Of a DNA stretch of 23,542 nt, positions 4,016-20,873 are shown piece after piece. A program made the translations under genes and the position numbers. Source of the stretch: Vitrella brassicaformis CCMP3155 (lineage: Eukaryota; Protista; Chromerida); the NCBI GenBank assembly GCA_001179505.1, contig CDMY01000758.1, positions 1-23,542 on the forward strand, given 5' to 3'. A model generated the notes under the pieces. The model made no database searches. It was not told where the DNA came from and saw only the letters and a program-made list of their open reading frames with translations. Numbering within the stretch: the stretch's first letter is position 1; each line of letters begins with the position of its first letter.

Positions 4016-7000
4016 CTAGCGTGACGTGGTGAGGATATGGACATTCTGCCTTAACCCTTCATCCTCATCATCCTCGCCTGTGTCATCAGCATCCTCAAAG
4101 TCAATGTCGCCGCTGTCCATCCTAACAGCCGCAAACCACATGGGCGACGTTGGCGAACTGATACCAGACACACAGTATGTGCATGCGCACATTGATCACG
4201 TCGGCAGATTTTCTTCCCTCGTGGTCGTACCGTTCGCCTGCAGGAACCTCTTCCGGCTCTTCTGCGTTGTGGTTGTCTCCCTGCTCCCCCGCGGCCTCCG
4301 TAGGCGATCTGACTTCAATGCCCTCAAGAGCCAGCGCCATGGCAGCTGTGCCGCTCTGCTGCTCCTGTGGGCGTTTCGGCGACGCAGTGGGAGAGTTTTC
4401 GACACTCTTGAAATGCACCTCGGATGGCCGTGCGTCCCTGCCTTCCAGACCCGGCTCATACCTCCCGCTGGCCATGGGGCTCTTGCCTGTCTTGATGATG
4501 CTGCTCATGCGACTCAGAAGCCCCATCAACACCCCAGCCCCAGGCTTCTTGTCGGGACCCCTCATATGCGCACGAGTCAAGCGCCTGAAAGAGAAGACGG
4601 TAAGCAACCCCATGCAAAGCGGGATGTCATAGGACATCTATAGATGCAGTCGGAATGTGCACTCACCCTGACGTGGCCATGTTGACCTGGAAGACGTCGC
4701 CAGCGTACAGGTCGTCAGGGATCAAATCGGAACCTGCATATATGCGGGCAGCGTGTGTCAGCGTTGCCTGGCACTCTGGCTGTGTTTTCCTTCGTCATGT
4801 CTCACCTTCTCTGCCCTGCACGAAAGCCAACACAGAAAACGGTAATTACCTAGCCCTACAGACTGTAGATGCGCGCAGGCACATACCAGGACTTTGTGAA
4901 GGCCCTTGACGTAAAGGGGCTTGTCGATGGCCTCGAGCTGCAGGCGGCAAGCGAGGCACGGAGCATAGCGACACCATTAAGCACCAGTGGCCACGTTGCT
5001 GCGATATGATGTGTTGTGCGTGTGGATGTAGGCCGACCTTTAGCATTTCGACTGTTTGTCTGAGTTTCCTCTTGTCGGGCGCCGTGACAGTCTCCAGATC
5101 CATCTCCTGCACACACCAATGTAGTGACCAATACATACCACCTCCCGCCGCCCTGTAGAAACACATTCATAGAGGCATCCATGTGCCTGACCAAGAACTC
5201 AGAGGGGGTGTGATAAAGACAGTATCCAACCTGCAGACATCATACGACCAACAGCAAGTGGTGCTGTGCCATCGACCCACTCTTCCGCCTACGATTTTGG
5301 AATCGAGAGTGAGTCTTTTGAGTTGCATTTTCTGCATTTTCTTGAGTCGTTTGTTGGACGCCATGACGATTGGCAGGACGATGCTGACGATGACAAGTGC
5401 GAAGCTGATGAAGACGGTGCCGAGCAGGGTGCCGATGAAGACAGACTCGTTCCTGTCTGTGCGAGGAATGAAGTACTGGCCGCTCACGCACATGACACAC
5501 AGCGCCAGCAGCAATGACACATCCAGAACTGACACATTGATCAGCCAGCCAAGCATTCAATCACATCACCACACAGCATAATACAGCCATGGCAAGGAAA
5601 TTATCACTGTGCGCCTTCTCTGTGCTAGGCGTGTACAATTGTTTTCGTTGGAGAGCCAAGGCCAGTAGAAGATCTGCAGTGCGAGCGGCCATATTGGTGT
5701 CAGATTCTGTATGTGCCGTTTGTGGCTCCTCGTGTGCCCATGCGCGTGCCTGTAGCGAGAGGGACACGATGATGATAAAGATGGTGATGAGGGCCTGCAA
5801 GCTGCACACACAAGGGACGGCAAGTTCAAACAGAGACCATTCCCTCTTGTTGGCCGATCCGCATCGCTGAGCCTTACTGGCCGTCATTCGGCGACATGGC
5901 TATACATGCACACATACACACAGACACACACACACACACGAGACACAGAGAGGAAGATAGAGGTGCTGTAGTGGCATGCAGCGCGCGTGAATGTGCAACT
6001 GACCCGTGACGGTAGCCAGCAGCCCGTTGCGGGCCAGCAGGATGGCTCCCCACCTTTGCATGAATGAAGTACACATAAGCCATCAGTGACACCCCAGATT
6101 GGATAGTGATCTACCAGTAGACGTCAGGGCGGAACCTGCGAACAAACAATGCACGGCACGCGATATATTAGTGTCAAGAGCGGAGGCTCTATAATGGACT
6201 TACCGAAAGAAGAGGAATCGGAATCGTTCCTTGAAGGATTTGTTCTCGTAATACCAAGGCGCCACAATGCTCACGTACGCAAACAGGGCATAAACACCAA
6301 ACTGGTAAGCGCAGAGATCAAGCATATGGACACCACTCGAAGCGGCCAGGGACAGGCAGCGACAGCTGTGGTGGTCATTTCACGCACCACATAGAAGAGC
6401 ATGACGAGGATCCCGACGGGAAGGAATTGCGTCCGCCATTCGTTACTGTCGCAGAGGATCTCCGGGTAAGCGAACAAGGTCCTCTTCTTGCTGCCATGCT
6501 CGTAGCACTGACCGTACGGCGGACACACCAGACATACAACATATAGGGCAATATGCACAGCCCCGCACCTGGAATGCGGCGCAGGCATTATTGACGAAAG
6601 AAATGTACAGAATCTGCACCGCCATCCCAAGGCTGTGGGATAGGAGGCAGGCAGAGAGGCAGAGAAGGAAGAATGGGGAACAAAGAGAGCATCAGGCACC
6701 TGTTGCAGAATTTATCGAAGTCTGTGAGGTCTGAGGAAGTGATGCGCTCGATGCACCGCACGAGTGGATTCCTCTGCACCATGAAGAACCGGGGCTTGGC
6801 CTCCTCCTCCTTATCCTCCGCGTGGACGTCCCTGACCATCCCGCGCGTTCTCTCCTTCATTGTCGGCGAGGCGTTCTCGGGTGACGGCCGGAAAATCTCC
6901 ACCATACGCGGGTCGGCCATTGCCTGACCCTCCCCCGCACCCTCGTCTGAGTCGTTGTCGCGGGGGACGATCTCGGGCAGGGCCTCGTCAGGCAGGTCCT

Positions 7001-10000
7001 CGATGGCCTCATCGTTGTCCGCAGCCAAAGAACTGTGCCGCCGCCGAGACACATCCTGCGAGCAGAAACAGAGAAACCCCGACGTAGTACAGGATCAAGG
7101 AACAGACAGGCACGTTTGGCGTCCTGTGGGCGAGGGCGGGCTCGTGTCGGGTAGGATGGTCTCTCTCCCTCTCTCTCCCTGTGTGACTGTGTGTGTGTGT
7201 GTGTGTGTGTGTGTCCGCGAACCTTTCCATGGGCCACTCGGTACATGACGCGAGTAAGGGATGAGCGGCGGCTTCGCTCCTGCGGGGCCGGGATGATGGG
7301 ACCTGTGGGCATACACACATACTACTACCTCGATGGACGCACGTGGAATTATTGCTGCGACTGTACCAGGTATGATTCGCAATGATTTGAGCATTGCACA
7401 GATTCCCCAGAGGGAGAAGAAGATGAATATGATGACAATGGGCACCAGCTGACGAGTGATGTAGCTGGCCAGAGGAGTCCGGCCAATCACGCAAGCTGAC
7501 AAACGTCAGCCACATGTTTACGTATGTCTCTTCCCATGGCCCTTTGTGGTGTCTGTGCCTGACCGAGGCGGATGAATTCGACGTCGAAAAGGAAGATGCC
7601 AGCGAAGGAGAAGATATCCCGCATAAATTGGGGATAGTCTATGTTGAAGGTCCCAACTATGCTGCACGCACAACACATGCAAGCCATGCTGAGGGCCGTG
7701 TTTGTCTCATGTGCCGAGTCTGTCTGTCTGTCTGTCTGTTTGTGCACGTCCCGACTCTAGCGAACTGCTTACGAAAGGTTCTGCATGAAGTTGATGAGCA
7801 TGCCGAGTGTGAGTGAGATGTTGAGAGTGACGGCGATCTTTCTGCTCTGCGGAGTGTTGACGAATATGTGGAACACGATGGCCAGAATGTAGAGCAAAAT
7901 GAGAGTGATGACGAACGGCCCCAAACTCGACGTGCCAGAGCCGCACTTGTTGCAGCTGCCCGCACGCTTGTAGTAACCTCGCTGGCATATGCTGCTTGCG
8001 CGAGACACACACAAGGAGACAGATGTTCATCGTATCGTTGTGCATGTCCTGTCCTGTCCTATCGTGCCGTGCGTGTATCTTACGAGCATGCTCTGCCTTC
8101 CCTGCCTTCGTCGCAGAGGGGCAATTCCTTCTGTAGAGCAGGGTCAGGGCTGCCACCTGAAGAGGGGACGCAACACAGATGCACAGCTGGTTTTGCTAGC
8201 TGCTCCCAAATTGACAGGAGGGCAAGTTGGCTGCTTGTGTATGTATGTATGTGTGTGCGTACCAAGACATGCGTATGGTTCGAGGCATCTGAATACATCG
8301 ATGTCCTCAAAGCTAGCTTTATCCTTGACGAGGGCGGCCCAGTAGTTCTTCTCCAGTAGGGGCAAGTCGTACAGACGATCTGCCTCCTCATCGTATAGCA
8401 CACCCACACAACGCAGACCGGTGTACTTGTTGCCGTCACAACCTGACACATGCACACATGCCCACACACACGCGACTTATTAATACAGGTGAGTACGCAA
8501 TCATGTGTCTCACTTGCCCACTTACCTTTGCACATATCGTGTTTAATGTCGAGAAAAGTGCCCTCGACACAAGTGCAGTCCTCAATGGTGCGAGCACCGA
8601 CATCGGGGGTCGATTTAGTGGAGGGACACTCCTGAATGAACAAAGGAACAAATGAATGCTGAATGAATGAATGAATGAACGAATGAAGCACATAGACGCG
8701 TACGATGCATTGTGTTTGGCCGGTATCATTCTGATAGGTTCCCTTGGGGCAATTGAGACACAGTTCCGTGCCGTTGTCCGGAGCATAATTCCCCTTGGCC
8801 TGCACAGCCAGCATGCAGTATACGCCAGACACGGACGCATAATCAGGGTTCCTCTGGAGGAAGAGGTGTGCGAATGAGTGTGGCAGCGTACACAGGGGTC
8901 GCAGATTTCGCTCCCCAGCTGATCCGTGGAGTTGCCTGCAATAAATACCCACTCGTGCGCAATCGCCCGTTTCCCTGACTTTGCCTGCGGGAGGTGAGAA
9001 TGGCTGACCGGGTGGGCAGGGAGTGCATGACAGGGAGCCATTCGTGTCGGCATACATTCCCCTGGCGCACGGCGTGCAAGACGGCTGGCCCGTGTCACCA
9101 TTGTACGTCCCCAGCAGACACGGAATGCACTCCTCCTGACCTGAATACCCACACAGAGACAGACATACATACAGATAGACGGACAGACAGACAGACAGAC
9201 AGGCAAACAGACAAACAGACGTAGATGGTAGCAATACGGACATGTGGAAGGCACGTGACAGTGACTGACCTGCTTGCGGCTGGAAGTGGCCTGCTGGGCA
9301 CTGTCGGCACATCCAATCGCTATCAGCGTACTGCCCCGCCGGACACTCCGGCGGGAGAGATAAAATCTCCATGGCGTTGTCGGCAAATCGCCACGGCCCA
9401 TACCACGTCATTTTCTGCAGATACCACTCGTACGCAGCAGCTGTACCGCAGGGAACAGCAAAATACGACATAGCACATCGACAACCCGATATCTCGGCCC
9501 TCTCTCCTCTCTCTGTGTGTGTGAGTACCTTCCGGTTGGGTAGGTGCCCCGCTTTCGTCAATCCGAAAGTATGAGGTTTTGGGGATGGAGTCATTGCGGT
9601 TGCCCGTCGAAGGGTCAAAGCTGACGTTGCCGCCAATTCCTAAAGAGGAAGGAGGCAGACTCATGTGACGGTTACCCAAAGCATCTAGACATACCGACAA
9701 CAGGGGCCTGACTTTCAAGCATCGCCTTCAACAGGTCGCCGCGCACGTCCTGCAATTGACCGCACAGACGAGCATGTCACCACCTTTCTGTAGTTGTGCC
9801 GCTGATCAGTACTGTTATATTAGTGCCATTGTTGAGGAGCGTGTTTGTGGCCACTAAGAGCGCCATCATGGCGTCGAAAGCACGACTTGACTGACATGGA
9901 AGACACGCACGGCGCTCGAGGAGGTCTCTGTCTTGTGTGTGTGTCTGTGGGTTGAGTTGTGTGCACCTCTCCGCCCGCCACGGGGTCTGGCTCGGGTATG

Positions 10001-12614
10001 CCCATCCCCCCCGGCCATGGGTAGGGGGGGGGTCTGCCTTGGAAGATGTCGATGTCCGTGTAGTTGGGGTAGGGCTCGATAAAACCGATTCCGGAATAAG
10101 TGGCCGCCAGACCTCCATCGTAAAAGATGCCTGACCAACACACACACGACCCAAACAAAGAGACAGCCATCACATGTGCACTTTGCTCCATCGACAGGGC
10201 TGACACCTACCGTCTAATGCCGTGCAGTCGGTTGCGTTCCTGATGGTGCGGTTGCAGGCTCCGTCCTTCTCGCACCCACCTGGAAGCAAATATGCGCGGC
10301 CCCACCGACCACACACCCACTAACCCACTCACTCACTCACTCACTCATTCACATGTGTGCGACCTGGCACTCACCATACAAGTAGCAGTGCATCTGGTCA
10401 GGGAAGTCACTCGGGGTCAGTTCTTCGTTCCAGAATTTTACGAACCTGAAGACCAACCAACACACGACAAGCATAGATGGCTCGATGAGTGTGCCTGTCG
10501 ATTGTGATGCGTCACGGGCGAGAGTGGCTCACTTAGGGTAGTTGGTAGGGTCGCGGACGTCAGTTCTTTCCAGCATGCCGCCGGCGAACTGACCAATGAC
10601 GTCTGGATGCCAAAAGGGAGGGTACCCCCCATTTGTCTCATAGTCGCACAGCGGGTCGTTCGGCAGTGTTGGGTCGCAGGTCCAGTCCGCTGGAGAATTG
10701 GGGAGTCCAAGGGTCCTGCAGCCACACACATACCAGGGAAGCGAGCCGACAATCAATCTATCTGATGAGCCGACCACATGCCCTCACCCCTCTCTGTGGA
10801 CGAAGATGTCCGACGTCACGACCCGCCAGAAGTGCCCCGGACCTACGAGGCCCTTTTCGATGATCAAGGGAAAGAACACCGAATACCCCGTCGACAGGAA
10901 GAGGACAAAAATACGACTGTTGAGTGTCGCCATGGACAGGTCGATTCGGCTGCTCCTGTCGATACATTCATACATACACAAAACGCACACACACATACAA
11001 CGCGATGGCCTGGTGGCGTGAGCAGTGCCATTCTGTGTCTCATACCAGAGCAGCTTGATTGCTTCCACCTGGTCAAGGAAGCTTTTTCTGTCGTTGAAAT
11101 CTCTCTCGCTGGGCAGTCCTTGCAAGGGCTGACCACGAAACTGCATACATCAACGTAGGTCACACGCACAAGGCTTCCATGCAGCCGCCGGCCAGCAGGG
11201 TGATTTGATGGTTGGGCGGATTTGTCACCTCAAGCTCATCGCCATATGCTTCCTTGACACACCGTTCGTAACGCTCGAAATGGCTCTGACCTGCGTGTAG
11301 GCAGCGCAAATGAGGCAAGCCACAATCTCAGCTTCCTGCTACCCACTGCCCCTCTGTGGCGGGTGACCTTGACATACCAAGGACATTGTCGGAGTAGAAA
11401 AAGGTCATCCGCCTGATTGTGAAATTCTTGACAATTTCCAAATCCGCGTTGCACAGTTCGCCTCCGTGCAAAGTCCTGCACACAGGTGCAGCCATAGCGC
11501 ATAGTGTTGTCTAGGCAAGAGATGCAATTTCTCTGTCTCTCTTTCTCTCTGTGTCTGTCTGTCTGTCTGTCTGTCTGGGTCTCCTCAACTGCCGTGAGGT
11601 GTGTGTGCGTACTGTACGTACGTACGTACCTGAACATGTACTGATAGAAGGCACGCCTCGACAGATCGGGGTCGCCCGAAAGGTCGGATATCTGGACCGT
11701 CTTGAATGTAGTGCCTGCCCGTTGATTGCCGTACAACACGAGAAGCCGAACATGACAATCACGGCTGTTCGGAGGCTCCTTCCTGTCTGTTGTCGTCCTA
11801 GTGTGTCAATGTGTGTGTGACGTATATGTGTCCGTACCAAGCGAAGCAATGGCTTTTGTGGAGGCGGAGATGTGACAACATATCAACGCATTCACTAACG
11901 CGTGTGCCACACAACATAGTGCATGAGACACACAGAGACACATCCAAAGATGCGTGGCCGTTGGTGCGTGGCTGGTGCCGGGGCTCCGTTTCTTGTCCCC
12001 TTTTTTGACCCCGTCTGTACCTGGTTCTCTCGTTCCTGCACATGGTCTCATCAGACCTGCAGCACGCAGCACTCTTGTGTGGCCCGCCTCATGTCTATGT
12101 CTCCATCGCCAAGCTGTGTCCGTTTTCAGCTTTCTCAGTGTTCCCGTGAAGGCACCTACCTTGTGCCCATTCAACAGTCCGCGCCTGAAGCCAACCAATT
12201 GACAAACCGATCAAGCAATCCATGTCGTCCGACGTACCGGACGGTGCTCCAGTGAGTGTGTGTGAGTCACTTACCTGGTTTTCGATGGTGTCGAGTATGT
12301 CTAATGAGATGTTAAAGTCCCTCTTGTCCGCCAGCGGCACCGGCAGCAGATCCGTATAGTTCTTCTCCCACACTAGTTTGGCTACCCAAGCCTGAATAGG
12401 AAAGATCCACGCGAACGACCCAAACCTGTAGACAACACGCGGCAACATCCAAGGAACCACTCATGCATGTAAGCGGCCCTCAGAAGGAGGCTTTTAGAAC
12501 GTATTCTGACCTGAAGTCTCCAGCGTATCCAAGCTCAAGCGTGCCGTCCACCTGCGCCGCAGACGGCACGACTCCAACGAAGAGGACAAACAGGAACGAT
12601 AAGCGGAAAACCAT
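4016..12614 (-). CDS. Receptor-like membrane protein: signal peptide + Venus-flytrap (ANF_receptor/periplasmic-binding type 1) + GCC2/GCC3 Cys-rich repeats + about 9 TM helices + acidic tail; many short exons
   Basis: ATG 12614, MVFRLSFLFVLFVGVVPSAAQ signal peptide. Exons 12614-12511 and 12425-12275 join in phase. VFT motifs: NISLDILDT, VNALICCHISASTKAIASL, QISDLSGDPDLSRRAFYQYMFRT, RRMTFFYSDNVLG, RIFVLF..GLVGPGHFW, AFDAMMALL, GIGGNVSFDPSTGNR. Cys repeats: CPAGQY..CRQCPAGHFQ, CIPCLLGTYN..CTPCARGMY, CLNCPKGTYQNDTGQ. TM motifs: RFRFLFFRFRPDVYWWG, WPWLSNENNFLD. Last exon 4121-4016 (RMDSGDIDFEDADD...TSR*) is preferred but not certain. Confidence 0.88.
5350..7930 (-). other. Multi-pass TM region of the receptor gene (about 9 hydrophobic segments, with a large acidic loop at about 6700-7050)
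   Basis: Hydrophobic segments: LGPFVITLILLYILAIVFHIFV; IAVTLNISLTLGMLINFMQNLSIVG; LVPIVIIFIFFSLWGICAML; SLGMAVQILYISFVNNACAAF; FLPVGILVMLFYVFGVYALFAYVSIV; WGAILLARNGLLATVT; ALITIFIIIVSLSLQIFYW; LDVSLLLALCVMCVSG; FIGTLLGTVFISFALVIVSIVLPIV. Confidence 0.75.
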
Positions 12615-12621
12615 TCGTATT

Positions 12622-15600
12622 ATGGAAGAGAAACGAAGGAAGAAACGGTGCGAGAGCGTGCGAGCTACGACCCCCTCCAGCCCCCACGTCTCTCTTTGCG
12701 ATCGTTTGCCTGGGCAGCAGCCACCAGCTCACCGTCGACCACGCGCTCCTCAAGCAGAACATCACAGCGGGGCAGAAGACACCCGTCTGTGACACCCGTC
12801 ACCATCGGAGTGACCAACGATGGCGCCACCGAGGCCACCCTCGATATCTCTCTCAAGGGTGGAATGCGCCCCTATTTCGGCCCAGAGATACCATCTGGAC
12901 GGCGGAGGACTACGACAGCTATTGGAGCTGGTGGTATGCCTCGAACGAAAGCGACAAGCGCGTCTGGTCCGAGGACAAAGGTCGGGAGGGCTGGGCAAGA
13001 GATCTAGAGATCTGTGTCGACAATGCACACGGGACAGAGATCTGACACGTCACCCGTCCTGCTGTGCGTGCTGCAGAGGCGTGGCTGCCCAGTGGTGGAC
13101 AGGTCCACAGCTTCGGGTTTCGCGAGAGTCCGGGCCTCTTCTCACCCGGACCCCGTGGTACTACGAAGGGTAAGCCGCGATCATGTATCAAATGCCTCAC
13201 ATCCAGCGAGCGGGTCGAATCTGTCGATTTCCTTACGCGCGCAGAGGCGCCATTTCAGGCCACGAGCGTCGGAATCCCCTACAGTACTGCGCACGCATAC
13301 ACGCGGAAGACAGGCCGTGGGTGGACTCGCTTTCTTGTATGTGATTGTGTTGGTTAGCGGCCATCCGGGTATCCAACGGTCATGGTACGCTGCATGACAG
13401 AGAGGGTTGCATCCAGGTGCAAGTTGCTTGCATCCCTTGCCTTGGTCTCCTTCAGGGGCTACGTTGGCATTGCCCGCTGGAATCCCGACTGCGGCTGGAC
13501 CGGCATTGCTAGAGCAGAGGAAAACCGGACCATGGAAGGTGGGTGGGCCGATTGAAAGACGGCGAGCCCGGCCATGCAATCACAACACCTGCTCTCTGTG
13601 TCCGTGCTCTGCTCTCTTTCAGACATCTGCCGCTGGAACCCTGGCTGGTAACCTGTGACATGTTGCATCAAATAAGAACGAGGGTCGAGGGCGTCTCGAT
13701 TGTCCTTCAGGGGATGGGTCGGCATTGCGCGAGGGTATGGCCCCCACGAATACACTGGATTCGGGTGACGGACGCGCACCGCACAGATACACACGTACAT
13801 ACATATGCAATGAATGGATTGGCCTCGTCTTGTGCACGGCCTGGTTCAGGTGGGTTGGCAACGGCCGCTGGTCATGGGTGAGTGCACTGAAGAACGAGAG
13901 GAGTGCGCCATTAGGGCAGGTTTCACGGATGCGCCATTATGGATGGGTGGGTTGCCAAGGGGCGCTGGTGAGTCCTGCCTACCATGGCTGGTGAGCCAAT
14001 CCAGAAAAGAAAAGGAGAGAAGGCTTGTCGCTGCTTTGCCCATTTTCCGGCCGCCTGTCTGTCCGGCGGCATATGAATGGACCAGGGGGTGGTTCGGCAT
14101 TGCGAGATGGCACCCTGCTGCCTGCGGTTGGGGATGGACGGGCATTGCCGGCTGGCTCGACAGCTACTTCGGGGTTCTGGGGCACGTGGGCCTAGGCCGC
14201 TGGAACCACTTTATTTCCATCGTAACCAACCTGCCTGCTATCACTTGATGCCCCGCCATCACATTTCTGTGTGTGTGTGTGTATGCAGGGCGTCGCCGGT
14301 GGGGCTGGATGTCGCCCGGTTATTCAGCGGTGGGGCTGGGCGCCCCCCGGCATTCAGCGGTGGGGCTGGATGTCCCCGGGCTTTCAGCGGTGGGGATGGG
14401 GGCCGCCCGGTATTCAGCGCATCTGAATGCCCGCTGGCATCCATCAGTGGGCATCCATCGCACCTGGGGATGGACGTCTCCTGGCATCCAGCGCAGCTTC
14501 TGGGGCTCTCCCGGCCTGCAGCGGTGGAGTGACTGGGGCCCCCAGCGCTGGATGCCTGGGAGCCCCAGCGCTGTATGCCACCGGACATCCATCGGGAGAA
14601 GCCGGGAGGCAGCAGCATGCCGTCCTCGCCAGCGTCGGTCCACCGCTGAATGCCGGGTGACATCCACCGCTGAATGCCACCGGACATCCAGCGGGATATG
14701 CCGGGGGCCCCCCAGTCACCCCAGGAGCGTTGGATGCCTCCAGAGTCCCCAGGCATTCAGCGCTGGGGCTCCCCAGGCATCCAGCGGTGCGTCTCGTGTG
14801 GCCTGTTTTACCAGGAAGAGGCCGCTGTATCGGCCCGGCGTCTGGAGGCTGCTCCAGCTCCCCAACCCACCGACGGTGGGTCCTACAGCCGACCCCCACA
14901 ATGGAAATGTCCCCAACGGCCAGCACCTGGAAGGACGTCTCCTGGAAAATCGTGCCTATCGGATACTGCAGGTAAAGAAAAGGCCCAGCGACTAGCCAAC
15001 CAAGGTATCAATCCAGATAGATCGACGATGGAAAAGTGCGTGTGTCTTGTGTGGCAGCTACACCTTCTGCTCATGGGGCGCCATGCGGCTTCGAGTTCGC
15101 ATCCAACTATTGCGGCGCCCGCTTCTGAGCCGTCTACGAGGGGCACGCAGAAACTTTCGGATTCTTCAAGTAGGACACTCTGCAACCATCATGGATGATG
15201 GATTCTCACCTCGTCCTAACTGGCGCCCCAACTTCCACGACTGTGCCATCGGTGAGCTCCCTGCCTCAGCACACCTCTCCAACTTCGACCTCAGTCTTTT
15301 CGAAACATCCGCGTGGCGCAAGAGGTCAGTTAACCACCCGGACAGCCAGCGTGCTACAGGAGTGCAGCATGGTTGCGTGTTGTGTCTGTGTGTTAGTGAG
15401 GTGACTCCTCGTGACCTGGGTATGAAGGCAGGTACGACGTGGGAGTCGTTGGTGGGTACGGCCAAAGACCACGTGCTGCACAAGTGGAACATGGTCCTGC
15501 TCTGATCATTCGACACCACTGCTATCAACGCCGCCAGCCCCAACTTCTACTGGAAGAACATCACACCCCCACCGGTAGGTGTGCATGGAACATCAGTCAA

Positions 15601-16684
15601 TCACCAGCCAGAGGTGTCTCACTCTCTGCCTCCCCTCTCGCTGGTTTTGGTTGTGCGGGCTCGTCAGCTCAAGGCCAAGCAGGGTGGTGGTGGCTCCCGT
15701 CGGCTGGCGTATGTAGACTTCCCCTCTAGCACCCTTTTCCGAGTGTTGGGCGACTGGAACTATACGGAGACAAAGGCCAATGAATACCTCATCCGTTCGG
15801 TCAAAGTTGACGACGACAACAAGATACTCGCCGTCACATTGGACACGGTCAGCAAGCCGGCAAGCCAAAGGGGAGCGGGCGGGACAAACACGTGAACACA
15901 GAACTCTTCAAGTAACAGACCCAACCACCATGGCCAGCCCCATGTGAATCTGTGTGTTTGTATATCTTTGTTATGCCTCGGTGTCATTGCTGTCCATCCA
16001 CCGACCCATGGATCGATCAGTGCGGAGATATCGATGCTGTACAGCCTGGCACGGTACCCTGGCTGCCCATGCCGCTGCCACTCTTTCTCACTGCCGATGA
16101 CTTTGCCAAGCTGTCGAGTGCACACGCTGCCATCGAGGCCGACATCCAGGAGTCACTCGACCTCAGCAACGTCACCAACGCCACACAAACCGCCAGACGA
16201 GCACTCCAGGCCAAAGAAGACACGTCAGCAAGACATTCGTGCCGTGCATCCCGACCTGTGTGCGTGTCGTTGGATTGCTTGCTTCAGCACGTCTGCGGAT
16301 GAGGCCGACCTGCCCGGTGGCAAGGGCGGCAAGTCGGGGCGGGAGCTGAGTGGCACTCCCCCCAGCGGCAGCACCACCGTTGTGGGGCTGCCTCCCCGCA
16401 TCCTGGTCGTCTACCACAACGCTACCCCTGCAGAGGCAGGACGCAGACGACTCAGCGGGCTCACAGACATCGCCGACAAACTCGGAGACGGTACCTATGC
16501 ACCTATGTGGATGTGCACGAAAGGCAGACAGCCAGGCAGGGCCAGGCAGGCGTGGACAAGAGTCAACATCTGCATTGCTTTCTCGCTCCCCGAGTCATAT
16601 GCCTCGCAGGATATCGATTGGAGAGCTCGTCGGCATTGTTTCTGTTCACAAGGTGGAGATGAAGCCTACACAACCGTGCGCTAG
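12622..16684 (+). pseudogene. Degenerate spliced gene for a Trp/Gly/Pro-rich repeat protein (GIARW/GIQRW repeats) with C-terminal RRALQ/RRRLS motifs
   Basis: Plus-strand AG/GT exon chain joining in phase: SGHPGIQRSW|GYVGIARWNPDCGWTGIAR..|DICRWNPGW|GWVGIARGYG..; later ..NFYWKNITPPP|LKAKQ..LAVTLDT|CGDIDAVQ..RRALQAKEDT|TSADE..GRRRLSGLTDIADKLGD. Disruptions: frameshifts at about 12790, 12886 and 14320 and in-frame TGA at 15503-15505. Start and stop are tentative; family not recognised. Confidence 0.55.
14294..14790. repeat. Minisatellite of 30-nt units plus degenerate, mixed-orientation GIQRW-coding repeats
   Basis: Units start at 14294 (31 nt), 14325, 14355, 14385 and 14415 (cagcggtggggctggatgtccccgggcttt type = QRWGWMSPGF). 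The minus-strand ORF 14259-14756 also reads GIQRWMSPGIQRW. Confidence 0.9.
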
Positions 16685-17056
16685 TATGGGCTGTCAAGAT
16701 GCAGCTGCAGCAGGAGAAGGGCCTCCTCGCCACAAAACAAACAGTCATTCATTCATCAGTCGACCAATATGGAGGACAACCGCACACTGGCTCATTACAA
16801 TGTCCAGGAGGACGCGACTCTGCACTTGGATTTTCCGTGAGGACACAAACAAGTCGTCCACTCATATTGTGCCCGAGTGCCCTTTCTGTCTTTACTGTAT
16901 GGCTTGCAGTGTGCTCACCAGTGGCCGTTACGGTTTCGGGGCGAGCATCGGTGTGTCGGCCGAGGAGCTGTCAATGCTGACAGAAATGGATGGAAGTAAT
17001 GCGGCGCTGGTCGAAGCCTGGCATGGCAAAGAGCACATGCTCCAGTGGTCGGCGAG
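16610..17056 (+). pseudogene. Frameshifted ubiquitin-like domain plus a following exon
   Basis: Three collinear pieces in different frames: ISIGELVGIVSVHKVEMKPTQ / VKMQLQQEKGLLATKQTVIH / MEDNRTLAHYNVQEDATLHL (16769 onward). They align with ubiquitin ([20 protein letters not shown]). Donor cc|gtgagg joins in phase to ag|tVLTSGRYGFG..WSAR|gtgac. Confidence 0.65.
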
Positions 17057-17284
17057 GTGACAGAGGCCTTTAAGAGCATGGCCACCATACTCACAACATC
17101 CTGCTCACCAAGCTCCGCAAGATCTGACCACACGAGACACAATATAGAAAGACAATGAGACAAGGCTCTCAATGTTGTATCGATGCATGTATGCAGGCTG
17201 GTCACTGTAGTAGATCCTTACACATAGCAATAGAAAGAGCACGTAGACATAGTAAAAGGAACACGTAACGACAAAGACACGTAG

Positions 17285-17870: not shown

Positions 17871-20800
17871 TCAACAAATGGATCTCGATATGTCGTTTTG
17901 CAGTATCACAAGCTTGTAGCAAAATCGTGCGGATAAGGTCCATATCCGGCTGTTCTACGAAGTTCTCAGTAATGTCTCCATTCCTATTTATTTATTGCCT
18001 ATTGCTTGCATACCCTTAGCTCCCACCCACGGCACGTGTCGAGGAAAGACGAAGGAAGTCAAAACACAAACTCACGCGAAAAAACCAAAAGCAGGGCAGC
18101 GGGCAACCACGCATATTCGTGCGCTTCTAGACTCGTTACCAGACCATGTCCTTACCATAGCACCTTCCTACAGGACACTCTGAAAATGGCAAAACAGGCA
18201 ACTTTGTACAAACGGCTGGGTCCTGACAGACGAGATTGAGAGCACGGACGCCAGAGTAGCTCGTCGAATACCGCCAGGCGCGGAGACTGTTCCCAGTGTC
18301 GGGACAAACCTTGTTGGTTTCCCTGACAATCAGGATCCACGACACAGGCAGTAAGGGGTAAGGTAACGTGAGTGGAGTGCATGTGTGACAGTAGAGATGC
18401 ATCGTTATGTTTGTGTAGGGAGTGTTTAATGCACTTGCTTTCTTTTATCTGACTGACTGATCACTCACCCCTTGGAGGCTGAGACGTCAATCGAACGTGG
18501 AGACGCATAGAAGATCAAATATTTGGATCCCGGAAGCCTCTGGCAGGATGAAACGATATCTGCCCGGTCGAAGTCGTACTGAAAGACCTGCTCAGTGTTT
18601 TCTACCCAACGACTCGGATCTCCGTAGCTGGTTCCGCATACTCTGGGTACTACGAATTCCTGAAAAAGGAGAGAAATACAAATACATCCGAATGCATCCG
18701 ATATCCAGCACCCCTCCATGCCCTACCTGGCAACAGCTTCCCTCCGCCCAACATCCATTGTTGAAGACGATTATGTTGCGGGTTGGCGACACGTCATATC
18801 TCGCCTCCTTGATGGCACCCAGCAAAGTTGAACTGAAGCGAATGTCATTGAAGCTCCACTTGGCACTGTGGCTGCTGTAGAGGACGCGATTAGCGTCAAA
18901 CGGGTCCGCGCGATAGTTGAAGGGACGGCCATAACGGAACAGAAAATCGCCTTTGGCCGTCGCTGCCTCGGCGGTGCTGATGGAGTGGTCGATTATGTAG
19001 ATTTCGCTTGTGTGACTGATGAGACAGAACATAAGAGCAGTAAAAGGACAGCATAGAAGAGACAAAGCGTGACGCTCTCACCGGGACGATATCATGATCT
19101 GGTCCAGCTCCTCGTTGTAGTCGAGTGAGTTCCAGTGAAGCCAGTCCACTGAAACTGAAAAGCTTATGTCCCTCGCTGTCACGGGCGGGATGTTGACATC
19201 GAGTCTGTAGTAGTAGTCGTCTGGATGGTCGCAGTAAGGAACTGACATAACCAACAGCAGCAGGCACAGCATCCATTTCTCTATGTCCATGAATGTGTGT
19301 GGGGGGTGTTTTACGTGTGTGTGCGTGTGTGTGGTGTACCGTAATTGTCCTTTGTCCTATCGAAGTCCTGGACCACAAGAGCGATACAGAGACAAAGGGG
19401 GAAGCCACACACTTACCTGGATAAGGTGGTCCCACATTCTCCAACCTGCCAGTGCACGACAGAATTTAATGATGGCAGACAGCATGATTTACACATGTCG
19501 TGCATCATATACTTACGCCACACTTCCTTTGCGGAGTTCTTGCCGACCGGCGTGACCTCAACGATCTCCTCCGTCAGCAGATACCCCGACTTGTTTTGGT
19601 TGTCTGGTATGTCTCGTGCAGGATCGCGGCCGGCCTGAATGGCCTCAGCGTAGTCCTTGACGACCCACAGGAGGTACAAGATGTTGCCGTTCGGCAGCCC
19701 AATTGTCTCGTGGTGCTGAATGGCAATGCGTCCTCTCTCGAATTTCGTGGTGTTAAAGTCCCACACGACCTGAGCCATGTACACGCATCCCTCACTCACT
19801 CAAATCATCCATCGATACATCTTGCGTACGGTGCTGTCTTGATCGATGAGCTGGAGAATCCCAGCGCGTCCGCCGTACGGAAACCACGGATCAGCGCGGA
19901 GCCCGGGTCTAGTTGGATCACTCGCACTTCGGAGGGCCAAACCATTCCTCAAAATGGAGGTCGCACCTGCCGCGGTGCCTCCGCTTTTCGTATCAGTGAT
20001 GTTGTACGTCTTGGCGATGCACAAATTCGAGTCATAGAGATATGCGACATTGACGCCATTGGGCGCCCACAGGGTCAGCTGGTCCATATGTCTCCCTCGC
20101 ATCTTGTCTAGAGGTCTGGTGTTCTCGAGGACCGATAGTACTGAAACCCACACAGTCAGCCATTTCATGTGTGCCAGTCCCATGACATATGCGGTCATCT
20201 CTGTGCATGACTGACCACCTGATGATGTGTTGGAGGTGAGGTTGCCCTGATGCACGGAAGTATCCACGTCATCTGTGCCATCGGCACGCGACGAAGTCAC
20301 GTGTCGGCGCCTCGGCGCGTGCCGGCGGACGGTGTTGCCTTGGGATACGGGCCCGGCCGAGGCGGAGCCTATGAGAAGGGCGACGAGAACCACCAGAATG
20401 GCAATCAGTGGCGTCACGACAAGAAGCTGGCCCCGCACCGACAACACACGAAACAGACCACGGAAGGGACACAGAGATGTGTGTGACGAAGGTGGTGCAC
20501 CACTGAGTGCTTTCACCTGCAGCAGCGGTGCCGATGACTTGTACGGATCCTGGTGCTGCCTTGGGACGAGATCTTCTGTGAGGAGGGAGCCGATAGCCGA
20601 TTTTTTTGGTAAATGTCTCTCTGGGAATCTGTCGGGGCGAGTCGTCCCGTCAAACCGAGACGAGGACAGCCGAGCCCGGACTGACACGCTGCCCCGAATG
20701 CACTTCGTCGTGTCTCCTTCATGCCACGTCCCCCTTTCCCCCCCTCCCGGCGTATCGCTACCGCTGGCTCTGTGTCTTCCTCTTCTGGCAGGTTCCCGCT

Positions 20801-20873
20801 TGGATGGGTTTGGTGAGGTGCCGATCGCCGTGGGTTTCAGATATAGTTGCCGACGTTGACAGGATCCACTCAT
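17871..20873 (-). CDS. assT: Aryl-sulfate sulfotransferase (ASST, arylsulfotransferase family), signal/anchor-bearing, about 10 exons
   Basis: In-phase spliced motifs: [147 protein letters not shown]. The start (ATG 20873 or shorter) and last exon (TGA 17871 or earlier) are uncertain. Confidence 0.88.

What the first reader, a model, noticed from the sequence alone, without database searches (positions are those of the whole stretch)
4016..12614. Class C GPCR-like ectodomain (Venus flytrap + Cys-rich) on a non-canonical bundle of about 9 TM helices in a protist
Seen: signal peptide, VFT motifs, Cys repeats and about 9 hydrophobic segments. Known: VFT + Cys-rich + 7TM is the mGluR/CaSR layout, and apicomplexans lack canonical G-alpha. 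Here the membrane part carries motifs (RFRFLF..YWW, PW..N.N.LD) that I associate with protist GCC2/GCC3 membrane proteins rather than 7tm_3. Inference: this is a convergently assembled small-molecule sensor with an unknown, possibly G-protein-independent output.
Basis: partly seen in the sequence, partly recalled or inferred. Interest (0 to 1): 0.72.

Follow-up and report, generated by a model that had tools for sequence, protein, structure and literature searches.

The report
Flytrap sensor on CRMP-type nine-helix core
This is one real, expressed gene of a chromerid alga (most likely Vitrella) that puts a small-molecule-binding "Venus flytrap" head and a cysteine-rich stalk on a nine-helix membrane body, not a GPCR body. 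That body looks like the CRMP family which malaria and Toxoplasma parasites need to trigger invasion, a link supported here only by motif comparison.

Summary
A minus-strand gene of at least 34 exons starts at ATG 12614. It encodes a signal peptide, a Venus-flytrap domain, about six Ephrin_rec_like (GCC2_GCC3) cysteine repeats, and a multi-pass membrane domain with a long acidic loop.

- **One gene, expressed:** an MMETSP transcript ORF reproduces eight splice junctions that link the flytrap end, the Cys repeats and the first membrane helices.
- **Flytrap:** it is 61% identical to Vitrella brassicaformis CEM23436.1. That protein passes Pfam ANF_receptor, and its Atlas model matches class C, GABA-B and taste-receptor flytraps.
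- **Membrane part:** it is not 7tm_3. Its exons hit, in order, a profile of a eukaryote-wide "Ephrin_rec_like + 9 TM" family. Of 30 members, 16 match Pfam TRP PF06011 (yeast Flc/Pkd2 type) at E 0.01 or better, one of them above Pfam's cut-off. Its ordered motifs match the published Toxoplasma CRMPA/B core by eye.

So this is a CRMP-type receptor with a flytrap head, convergent with class C GPCRs. Its output is unknown. Earlier notes of this scan report sister genes of the same design on other DNA of this genome.

The parts
12511..12614 (-). Exon e1: start codon (12614-12612), signal peptide, and the first strand of the flytrap (VDGTLELGYAGDF)
   Evidence: Direct reading. Aligns with P0151 residues 8-36, 18/29 identical. 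GT donor present.
9270..12425 (-). Exons e2-e15, the Venus-flytrap (ANF_receptor-type) domain: 12425-12275, 11778-11630, 11475-11378, 11290-11229, 11140-11046, 10955-10788, 10715-10533, 10445-10364, 10268-10211, 10130-9967, 9890-9813, 9749-9695, 9639-9529, 9440-9270. The 3' half of e15 already encodes the first Cys repeat.
   Evidence: All borders are AG/GT and phases are consistent. The exons align in order with P0151 residues 42-568; 61% identity over 466 aligned residues for e1-e15. P0151 passes Pfam ANF_receptor and has Atlas flytrap matches.
8084..9140 (-). Exons e16-e21, the Cys-rich stalk of Ephrin_rec_like / TNFR-like repeats: 9140-9009, 8935-8892, 8799-8704, 8631-8526, 8442-8263, 8156-8084
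   Evidence: Pfam PF07699 E=9.2e-23, 5 stretches. All junctions are reproduced exactly by the MMETSP transcript ORF P0001.
7773..7991 (-). Exon e22: juxtamembrane Cys knot (CQRGYYKRAGSCNKCGSG, DUF7630-like), TM1 and TM2
   Evidence: Family profile positions 57-113, E=1.2e-7. hhalign 87% on the Cys knot. Junctions 8084|7991 and 7773|7661 are fixed by P0001.
7367..7661 (-). Exons e23-e24 (7661-7564, 7495-7367): outer loop 1 (NIDYPQFMRDIFSFAGIFLFDVEF..C) and TM3
   Evidence: Family profile positions 119-151 (E=0.02) and 152-190 (E=0.14), following directly on e22. AG/GT borders.
6700..7302 (-). Exons e25-e26 (7302-7223, 7055-6700): long cytoplasmic loop between TM3 and TM4. In e26, 28 of 118 residues are Asp/Glu.
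   Evidence: Open frame, AG/GT borders and phases. Composition. Family members have a far shorter loop here (model).
6204..6632 (-). Exons e27-e29 (6632-6569, 6507-6388, 6301-6204): TM4, a two-cysteine outer hairpin, TM5, and the start of the RFRFLFF motif
   Evidence: Family profile positions 262-316, E=1.3e-5, and 312-342 (weak, E about 12) across the predicted e28/e29 junction. AG/GT borders.
6004..6135 (-). Exon e30 (6135-6115, a 21-nt micro-exon, FRPDVY) and e31 (6053-6004, WGAILLARNGLLATVT = TM6)
   Evidence: Together they give exactly the family spacing FLY..Y....W.WE. The same motif occurs in TgCRMPA/B. No transcript evidence.
5637..5801 (-). Exon e32: Ser/His/Arg-rich loop and TM7 (IWPLALQIFYWPWLSNENN). 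An alternative GT-AG solution exists: 6053-6011, 5794-5768, 5706-5637.
   Evidence: Both solutions keep the frame. A splice-site matrix built from the other introns of this gene favours the listed one. Unresolved without RNA reads.
5293..5528 (-). Exon e33: TM8, TM9 and a basic membrane-proximal stretch (KRLKKMQKMQLKR)
   Evidence: Family profile positions 412-483, E=0.04, last in the ordered series. Kyte-Doolittle peaks of 2.35 and 2.87.
4016..5106 (-). Cytoplasmic C-terminal tail: e34 (5106-5038), then tentative exons 4937-4887 or 4937-4850, a possible 10-nt exon at 4815-4806, 4733-4667, and 4584-4174 followed by 4121-4019 with the stop at 4018-4016. Alternatively the frame reads through to a stop near 4123.
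   Evidence: GT-AG borders and phase arithmetic only. No homology or transcript support. Treat as provisional.

Best explanation
The locus is a single expressed gene of about 1,570 codons in a chromerid alga, most likely Vitrella brassicaformis or a near-identical strain.

**Architecture.** From outside to inside the protein has: a signal peptide; a bilobed Venus-flytrap domain of the ANF_receptor / periplasmic-binding-protein type I kind; a rigid stalk of about six Ephrin_rec_like cysteine repeats ending in a juxtamembrane Cys knot; a nine-helix membrane core (N-terminus out, C-terminus in) of the 'Ephrin_rec_like + 9 TM' family; a lineage-specific acidic loop of about 190 residues after TM3; and a cytoplasmic tail. 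By motif comparison only, that membrane family is the one which includes the apicomplexan and ciliate CRMPs. It is distantly related to the fungal Flc/Pkd2 'TRP' family, PF06011.

**Most likely mechanism (inferred).** A small ligand closes the flytrap. The movement passes through the disulfide-rich stalk to the nine-helix core, probably within a dimer as in class C GPCRs and as predicted for CRMPA/B. The core then changes its cytoplasmic face or lets cations through.

**What is shown and what is inferred.** Shown: gene structure, expression of the central part, the domain identities, and the absence of a 7tm_3 body. Inferred: ligand binding, the direction of signalling and the nature of the output.
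For: **Gene model**
- 34 exons, all with AG/GT borders and consistent phases.
- Eight junctions are reproduced exactly by the MMETSP transcript ORF P0001, which runs from the end of the flytrap into the first membrane exons.

**Flytrap**
- e1-e15 align in order with CEM23436.1 at 61% identity.
- CEM23436.1 scores ANF_receptor at 34.6 bits against a cut-off of 25.4.
- Atlas feature scores are 0.95-0.96 to ANF_receptor clusters.
- The Atlas's own model has TM-scores of 0.59-0.63 over 368-395 residues to GABA-B, T1R, GLR and guanylate-cyclase flytraps.

**Stalk**
- PF07699 E=9.2e-23.

**Membrane core**
- 58 of the 150 best Ephrin_rec_like proteins carry a C-terminal multi-TM cluster.
- A jackhmmer profile built on these clusters (52 of the 58 matched it) hits the window's exon pieces in genome order at profile positions 57-113, 119-151, 152-190, 262-316, 312-342 and 412-483.
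- Two of those hits are significant on their own, E=1e-7 and 1e-5.
- 16 of 30 members match PF06011 at E 0.01 or better and 12 of 30 match DUF7630. One member is above the PF06011 cut-off.
- An AlphaFold model of a member (pLDDT 80, pTM 0.72) shows nine membrane helices.

**CRMP link**
- The published TgCRMPA/B TM-core sequences (PMC9815656, S2 Table) show the same ordered motifs as the family consensus and the window.
- CRMPs are described as Ephrin-receptor-like/EGF repeats plus nine TM, with many diverse copies in Chromera.
Against: - The window's own protein could not be folded or searched as a whole. The joined model was left out by rule, so the nine-helix count and the flytrap fold rest on relatives.
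- No single window exon reaches Pfam ANF_receptor, TRP or 7tm_3.
- Four of the six ordered profile hits are weak on their own (E 0.02 to 12).
- CRMP membership was checked only by eye against published sequences, not statistically.
- No solved structure resembles the membrane core: Foldseek E 0.06 or worse, VIA-align Z 7.6 or less, which is within noise for helical bundles. Nothing is therefore known about a pore or a coupling surface.
- TM7 in the preferred exon model has only about 15 hydrophobic residues.
Exons e1-e14 and e24 onwards lack direct transcript support.
Confidence: 0.72

Rival explanations
1. The nine-helix core is itself a cation channel of the fungal Flc/Pkd2 'TRP' (PF06011) kind. 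The protein would then be a ligand-gated channel, with flytrap closure opening a Ca2+-permeable path. This would be an analogue of ionotropic glutamate receptors built from unrelated parts.
For: - 16 of 30 family members match PF06011 at E 0.01 or better (best 1e-11), and one is above the curated cut-off.
- An Atlas cluster with the same predicted fold carries Ephrin_rec_like in 78% and TRP in 12% of its members.
- Fungal PF06011 proteins affect Ca2+ homeostasis (PMC8618638).
- An earlier scan note on a sister gene reached the same Flc/Pkd2 reading.
Against: - No window exon reaches PF06011.
- The family lacks the TRP_N/ML-like head of the fungal proteins.
- Channel activity of PF06011 proteins is not backed by any solved structure among the entries searched.
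- Family members carry C2, TIR, WW or START domains on the cytoplasmic side. That fits a receptor that recruits partners better than it fits a pore.
- Toxoplasma CRMPs act in a protein complex (PMC9815656).
Confidence: 0.25
2. It is a true, divergent class C GPCR. The membrane part would be a 7tm_3 domain blurred by divergence and extra helices, signalling through heterotrimeric G proteins.
For: - The layout flytrap + Cys-rich region + multi-pass membrane domain is that of mGluR/CaSR.
- NCD3G gives a sub-threshold hit on the relative CEM23436.1: 27.2 bits against a cut-off of 38.9.
- PANTHER calls TgCRMPA 'GPCR-like' (PMC9670195).
Against: - No 7tm_3 hit on any exon piece or on any of 30 family membrane domains.
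- The family model has nine helices and a different loop pattern.
- Foldseek against solved GPCRs gives TM-scores of 0.1-0.2.
- The membrane exons match the Ephrin_rec_like/9TM profile instead.
Confidence: 0.03
3. The flytrap and the membrane protein are two neighbouring genes, or the model is a read-through artefact. On this reading the real flytrap product is a short GPI-anchored protein like its relative CEM23436.1.
For: - The relative CEM23436.1 ends after three Cys repeats in a hydrophobic, GPI-signal-like tail. It has its own transcripts ending there (P0152, P0091).
- No transcript evidence was obtained here for e1-e14.
Against: - Transcript ORF P0001 begins inside e15, which encodes the last flytrap residues and the first Cys repeat. 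It continues without a break through e23 in the membrane domain.
- e14 and e15 are contiguous in the alignment to one protein.
- There is no in-frame stop, no hydrophobic tail and no room for a promoter in the 55-129-nt introns around e13-e16.
Confidence: 0.05
4. The flytrap no longer binds a small ligand. The protein would be an adhesion or contact receptor, or a scaffold like other CRMPs whose heads are lectin, Kringle, LRR or EGF modules, with the flytrap serving only as a protein-protein interface.
For: - CRMP heads are highly varied and mostly adhesive (PMC9815656, PMC9670195).
- Heads seen on the same membrane core include LRR, PA and Chlam_PMP.
- The ANF_receptor match covers only profile positions 64-210 of 353, so pocket residues could not be assessed.
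Against: - The flytrap is kept at 61% identity between two paralogues with no frame damage.
- The Atlas model aligns over both lobes, 368-395 residues.
- Flytraps on membrane proteins generally bind small ligands (established knowledge of class C GPCRs, iGluR/GLR and natriuretic peptide receptors).
Confidence: 0.12

Closest known systems
Cysteine repeat modular proteins (CRMPs) of Apicomplexa and ciliates: TgCRMPA/B, PfCRMP1-4, Tetrahymena CRMP1/2
   Same: - Signal peptide and a modular ectodomain.
- Ephrin-receptor-like/EGF-like Cys repeats next to the membrane.
- A conserved core of nine TM helices, N-terminus out and C-terminus in.
- The same ordered core motifs: C..C..GY..C..CP; IKI...FP.W; W.IGIP; GFL..GF....WYWE....ARK; QPFDKRS..LD.
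- The family is reported as expanded and diverse in chromerids (PMC9815656).
   Different: - The head here is a Venus flytrap. The two CRMP papers read mention none, and a combined-term paper search listed none.
- There is a ~190-residue acidic loop after TM3.
- The protein is much shorter than the parasite CRMPs.
- The organism is a free-living alga without host invasion.
- Membership was tested only by motif comparison.
Class C GPCRs (mGluR, CaSR, GABA-B, T1R)
   Same: - The order flytrap, then Cys-rich stalk, then multi-pass membrane domain.
- The flytrap is of the same ANF_receptor type. The Atlas model of the relative aligns to GABA-B and T1R flytraps at TM about 0.63.
   Different: - The stalk is made of Ephrin_rec_like repeats, not one NCD3G domain.
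- The membrane domain is not 7tm_3 and has nine helices.
- There is no evidence of G-protein coupling.
- The resemblance is one of design, that is, convergent.
Fungal 'TRP' family PF06011 (S. cerevisiae Flc1-3, S. pombe Pkd2, A. nidulans TrpR)
   Same: A multi-pass core with a weak but recurrent profile similarity: 16 of 30 family members at E 0.01 or better, and one above the cut-off.
   Different: - The fungal proteins carry an ML-like TRP_N head and no Cys repeats or flytrap.
- No window exon reaches the model.
Vitrella brassicaformis CEM23436.1 (P0151), and the GPI-anchored flytrap EhVFT of Entamoeba (PMC12965686)
   Same: - CEM23436.1 shares the signal peptide, the flytrap and the first three Cys repeats at about 61% identity, in the same order.
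- Like EhVFT, it is a flytrap held at the surface without a multi-pass domain.
   Different: They end in a short hydrophobic, GPI-signal-like tail. The window's gene continues into more Cys repeats and the nine-helix core.
Venus-flytrap receptor kinases, natriuretic-peptide receptor guanylate cyclases, and plant or animal glutamate-receptor channels
   Same: An ANF_receptor-type flytrap grafted on an unrelated output module, which shows that the flytrap is a portable sensor.
   Different: The outputs there are a kinase, a cyclase or a tetrameric pore. Here the output is a CRMP-type nine-helix core of unknown activity.

Membership tests
Class C GPCR (Glutamate family) | N-terminal Venus flytrap (Pfam ANF_receptor) | tested here: met
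   Met through a 61%-identical relative. P0151 scores ANF_receptor at 34.6 bits against a cut-off of 25.4. Atlas structure and feature matches agree. The window's exons e1-e15 are collinear with P0151. Single window exons give no hit.
Class C GPCR (Glutamate family) | NCD3G cysteine-rich domain between flytrap and membrane | tested here: inconclusive
   NCD3G is below threshold on P0151: 27.2 bits against a cut-off of 38.9. The stalk scores as Ephrin_rec_like instead, E=9.2e-23.
Class C GPCR (Glutamate family) | 7tm_3 heptahelical domain | tested here: not met
   No 7tm_3 hit on any exon piece or on 30 family membrane domains. The family model has nine helices. Foldseek TM-scores to solved GPCRs are 0.1-0.2.
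Class C GPCR (Glutamate family) | Coupling to heterotrimeric G proteins | not testable with these tools
   Needs an assay. The genome's G-alpha content was not examined.
CRMP (cysteine repeat modular proteins) | Cys-rich EGF/Ephrin-receptor-like repeats directly before the membrane core | tested here: met
   PF07699 in 5 stretches. The juxtamembrane knot CQRGYYKRAGSCNKC aligns to the family profile and resembles LCSECRRGY..CTSCP of TgCRMPA.
CRMP (cysteine repeat modular proteins) | Conserved core of nine transmembrane helices | tested here: inconclusive
   Exon pieces map in order onto a family profile whose modelled member has nine helices. Nine to ten hydrophobic segments lie in e22-e33. The window's own joined sequence was not folded, and TM7 is short in the preferred model.
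CRMP (cysteine repeat modular proteins) | Sequence homology of the core to TgCRMPA/B or PfCRMPs | tested here: inconclusive
   Ordered motif agreement was seen by eye with the sequences printed in PMC9815656, S2 Table. No statistical comparison was possible, because those sequences have no reference usable in the tools.
CRMP (cysteine repeat modular proteins) | Role in regulated exocytosis; CRMPA/CRMPB heterodimer | not testable with these tools
   Needs genetics and biochemistry in the alga.
Pfam TRP PF06011 (Flc/Pkd2 type) | Match to the PF06011 model above its curated cut-off | tested here: inconclusive
   The window's exons give no hit. Among relatives, P0150 scores 38 bits against a cut-off of 28.5, and 16 of 30 reach E 0.01 or better.
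Pfam TRP PF06011 (Flc/Pkd2 type) | ML-like TRP_N head | tested here: not met
   No such hit on any exon piece or on P0113, P0150 or P0151. The head is a flytrap plus Cys repeats.

The most novel reading that the evidence does not exclude
Chromerids kept, or invented, a family of receptors in which interchangeable ligand-binding heads drive the same nine-helix core that apicomplexan parasites later specialised as the trigger of rhoptry discharge. The flytrap here is one such head; earlier notes of this scan report LRR and bacterial solute-binding heads on sister genes. If so, the CRMP core is a general ligand-to-cytoplasm transducer, a third large class of eukaryotic surface receptors beside GPCRs and single-pass receptors. 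The flytrap versions would offer a defined small-molecule switch with which to find out what the core does.
Probability: 0.3. Interest if true: 0.85.

Novelty: new variant of a known kind. Interest (0 to 1): 0.62.

Why it matters
[quoted passage not shown] What their nine-helix core does is unknown, and so is what activates it. The published model, "a GPCR-like sensor of host contact", is inferred from adhesive heads.

A free-living relative that mounts a classical small-molecule flytrap on what looks like the same core argues two things. The core can transduce a ligand-induced conformational change. It also gives an experimentally simple handle: add the ligand and read the output. The parasite proteins do not offer this.

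The gene is also a clear case of convergent receptor design, because the class C GPCR layout has been rebuilt on an unrelated membrane domain. This matters for GPCR censuses in protists, which can be misled by the ectodomain. Some relatives are already labelled "G protein-coupled receptor-related" or "metabotropic glutamate receptor" in databases.

Tried and rejected
**Searches for the window's own full-length protein**
- The word search with the 519-residue piece returned only P0001, an out-of-frame ORF of the mRNA.
- The whole-library HMMER search returned repeat proteins and one relative.
- Two metagenome scans with membrane exons found nothing.
- A look-up of contigs encoding P0001 found nothing.
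- A word search with the flytrap of P0151 found only its own cluster.
- The protein therefore seems absent from the collections, and no reference existed for folding it.

**RNA evidence**

**Structure and profile attempts**
- AlphaFold on P0151:20-545 without an alignment failed (pLDDT 35) and was not used.
- MAFFT of exon fragments against P0151 misaligned them, so pairwise local alignments were used instead.
- hhalign of the family alignment against single exons was informative only for e22.
- A profile search of PDB sequences and two fold searches found no solved relative of the membrane core.
- The Atlas feature search with exon e22 alone was uninformative.

**Other readings considered**
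- The Toxoplasma TRPPL channels are of the PKD type and are not relevant.
- A second exon solution for TM6/TM7 was rejected as primary because of weak splice sites, but it is not excluded.
- Cluster names for ten giant family members gave no annotation.

- The joined spliced protein was never built for, or sent to, any search or fold. All searches were made exon by exon by reference.

Full report
**What is there**

The window has about 54% G+C, short GT-AG introns and CA/TG microsatellites, so it is eukaryotic. Between 12614 and about 4016 the minus strand carries a chain of short open segments that read as protein.

The first is an ATG at 12614 followed by MVFRLSFLFVLFVGVVPSAAQ, a signal-peptide-like start. 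I built the exon model by hand from three-frame views and then checked it by script. The 34 exons from 12614 to 5038 all have AG and GT borders, carry no in-frame stop, and have consistent phases. They hold 1355 codons, with introns of 55-496 nt.

**Is it one expressed gene?**

The word search with the longest stop-free piece returned a single hit, P0001. This is a 328-residue ORF predicted from a transcript of the MMETSP marine-protist transcriptome collection. It is an out-of-frame reading of this gene's spliced mRNA.

- Its segments match the window exactly, in eight blocks.
- For each of seven joins there is exactly one GT-AG pair that reproduces the ORF: 9270|9140, 9009|8935, 8892|8799, 8704|8631, 8526|8442, 8263|8156 and 8084|7991.
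- Its last codon and stop fix an eighth join, 7773|7661.

The transcript thus runs from exon e15 (the last flytrap residues and the first Cys repeat) to e23 (the outer loop after TM2). The ectodomain and the membrane domain are therefore on one mRNA.

Exons e1-e14 and e24 onwards have no direct RNA support. I could only note that one run, guessed to be RNA, holds 40% of the sampled words of 7000-10500, about the exon share of that stretch.

**The head**

No single exon reaches a Pfam model. The whole-library search found P0091, whose cluster holds Vitrella brassicaformis CEM23436.1 (P0151, 671 residues).

- The window's exons e1-e15 align one after another to P0151 residues 8-568, with 285 of 466 aligned residues identical.
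- P0151 passes Pfam ANF_receptor: E=1.5e-8, 34.6 bits against a cut-off of 25.4.
- The ESM Atlas places P0151 with ANF_receptor/Peripla_BP_6 clusters, with feature scores of 0.95-0.96.
- The Atlas's own model of P0151 aligns over 368-395 residues, at TM 0.59-0.63, to the flytraps of GABA-B receptors, T1R taste receptors, plant GLRs, guanylate cyclases and bacterial binding proteins.

My own AlphaFold run without an alignment failed (pLDDT 35) and is disregarded. The flytrap is therefore well supported for the relative, and for the window by 61% identity along the whole domain. The ligand pocket was not assessed.

P0151 itself ends after three Cys repeats in a hydrophobic, GPI-signal-like tail. 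Its own transcripts end there too (P0152, P0091). It is a free-standing paralogue, comparable to the GPI-anchored flytrap of Entamoeba (PMC12965686).

**The stalk**

Piece 8083-9639 scores Ephrin_rec_like (formerly GCC2_GCC3) at E=9.2e-23 in five stretches. Exons e15-e21 encode about six such repeats. Exon e22 opens with a juxtamembrane knot, CQRGYYKRAGSCNKCGSG, of the DUF7630 kind.

**The membrane part**

There is no 7tm_3 hit anywhere.

- Of the 150 best Ephrin_rec_like proteins in the library, 58 have a C-terminal cluster of six or more hydrophobic segments, and 52 of these proved mutually homologous.
- A jackhmmer profile of this group hits the window's exon pieces in genome order, at adjoining profile positions:
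  - 7772-8026 at positions 57-113, E=1e-7
  - 7490-7756 at 119-151
  - 7098-7505 at 152-190
  - 6274-6711 at 262-316, E=1e-5
  - 6203-6379 at 312-342, weak (E about 12)
  - 5170-5556 at 412-483
- The predicted joins e28/e29 (LFYV|FGVYALF against llYpiGIPllF) and e29/e30/e31 (FLFFRFRPDVYWWG against FLY..Y....W.WE) restore the family's spacing. This supports even the 21-nt micro-exon e30.
- Named members come from Anaeramoeba and Plasmodiophora.
- Predicted structures of the same shape occur in green algae, haptophytes, ciliates, cnidarians and sponges, with Ephrin_rec_like, LRR or Chlam_PMP heads. Members found by sequence also carry PA domains on the head and WW, C2 or TIR domains on the cytoplasmic side.
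- An AlphaFold model of one member (P0113:454-1087, pLDDT 80, pTM 0.72) shows the Cys knot and nine membrane helices. It also has a two-strand outer hairpin between TM4 and TM5 and an amphipathic helix after TM5.
- It has no convincing solved relative.
- Sixteen of 30 members match Pfam TRP PF06011, the fungal Flc/Pkd2/TrpR family, at E 0.01 or better. One is above the cut-off.

**The name of the family**

After I had reached the PF06011 link, the scan's earlier notes on other pieces of this genome called the same membrane body "CRMP-type" and named the organism Vitrella. I treated this as a lead.

The literature describes CRMPs as alveolate proteins with Ephrin-receptor-like/EGF repeats and nine TM. 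They are essential for rhoptry discharge, are "GPCR-like" but not GPCRs, are expanded and diverse in Chromera, and have homologues in Dictyostelium (PMC9670195, PMC9815656).

The TM-core sequences of TgCRMPA/B printed in the S2 Table of PMC9815656 show, in the same order, the motifs of the family consensus and of the window:

- LCSECRRGY..CTSCP
- IKI...FPSW
- a two-cysteine loop before VGI..L
- WSIGIP
- GFLHNGFVKKYWYWEMVVFARKF, against the window's RFLFFRFRPDVYWWGAILLARNG
- QPFDKRS..LDKLE, against the window's WPWLSNENNFLDVSL

This is agreement by eye, not a statistic.

**Open points in the model**

- **TM6/TM7.** Two GT-AG solutions keep the frame. A splice-site matrix built from the gene's other introns favours the one with a 31-residue Ser/His/Arg-rich outer loop and a short TM7. 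The alternative gives a longer TM7 but needs three weak sites.
- **The tail.** Below 5038 the model rests on phase arithmetic only. Otherwise the frame ends near 4123.

**Reading**

The class C layout is rebuilt here on an unrelated nine-helix body. The body can now be named: the Ephrin_rec_like/DUF7630 nine-helix family, which looks like the CRMP core and is distantly like PF06011.

How it signals is not known for any member. I consider transduction of flytrap closure through the stalk to the core the most likely working, probably in a dimer. The output would be either recruitment at the large acidic loop and tail or cation flux. The second I rate at about one in four.

The pairing of a flytrap with a CRMP-type core is not mentioned in the two CRMP papers I read, and a combined-term paper search listed no such paper. 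It was also absent from the 26 relatives with Pfam annotation found by the word-limited family search, though that census is far from complete. Earlier notes of this scan report sister genes of the same design in this genome, so this is one member of a small family rather than a unique fusion.

**Restrictions observed**

Noticed in passing
window 7774-9401 (minus strand), protein P0001: The only database protein matching this gene is a 328-residue 'complete' ORF from an MMETSP transcript. It is read one base out of frame across eight exons, so it is an annotation artefact. The true product seems absent from the protein collections searched, including the annotated Vitrella proteome.
   Followed up: partly
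L001:6001-9716 (Vitrella brassicaformis CDMY01000568.1), protein P0151: This paralogue has the same signal peptide, flytrap and three Cys repeats, but ends in a hydrophobic, GPI-signal-like tail instead of the nine-helix core. A free and a membrane-coupled version of one sensor head therefore coexist.
   Followed up: partly
window 9150-9260, 8640-8700, 7180-7215, 5900-5950 and other introns: Intronic (TG)n/(CA)n and (TGTC)n/(GACA)n microsatellites translate into strongly hydrophobic strings (CVCVCV, SVCLSVCL). These score as membrane helices on a hydropathy scan and could inflate a helix count made from raw ORFs.
   Followed up: yes
window 6115-6135: A 21-nt micro-exon (FRPDVY) is needed to keep the frame and to restore the family motif spacing. 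A possible 10-nt exon at 4806-4815 in the tail is unverified.
   Followed up: partly
window 4123-4140: If the last intron is not spliced, the protein would end in ...HVVCGC. A C-terminal CXC resembles a Rab-type prenylation signal. This is probably chance.
   Followed up: no
window 13800-17100 and 17871-20873: The flanking ORFs gave no Pfam hit when scanned as raw ORFs. These include the G+C-rich stretch at 14-15 kb (64% G+C) and the region that another note reads as an aryl-sulfate sulfotransferase. They are probably also split by introns.
   Followed up: no
proteins P0164, P0166, P0172, P0173; Atlas row 3: Database names for relatives of this membrane family include 'G protein-coupled receptor-related', 'insulin-like growth factor binding protein' and 'Metabotropic glutamate receptor 8 (Fragment)'. 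All are taken from the Cys-rich part and are misleading for GPCR censuses.
   Followed up: no
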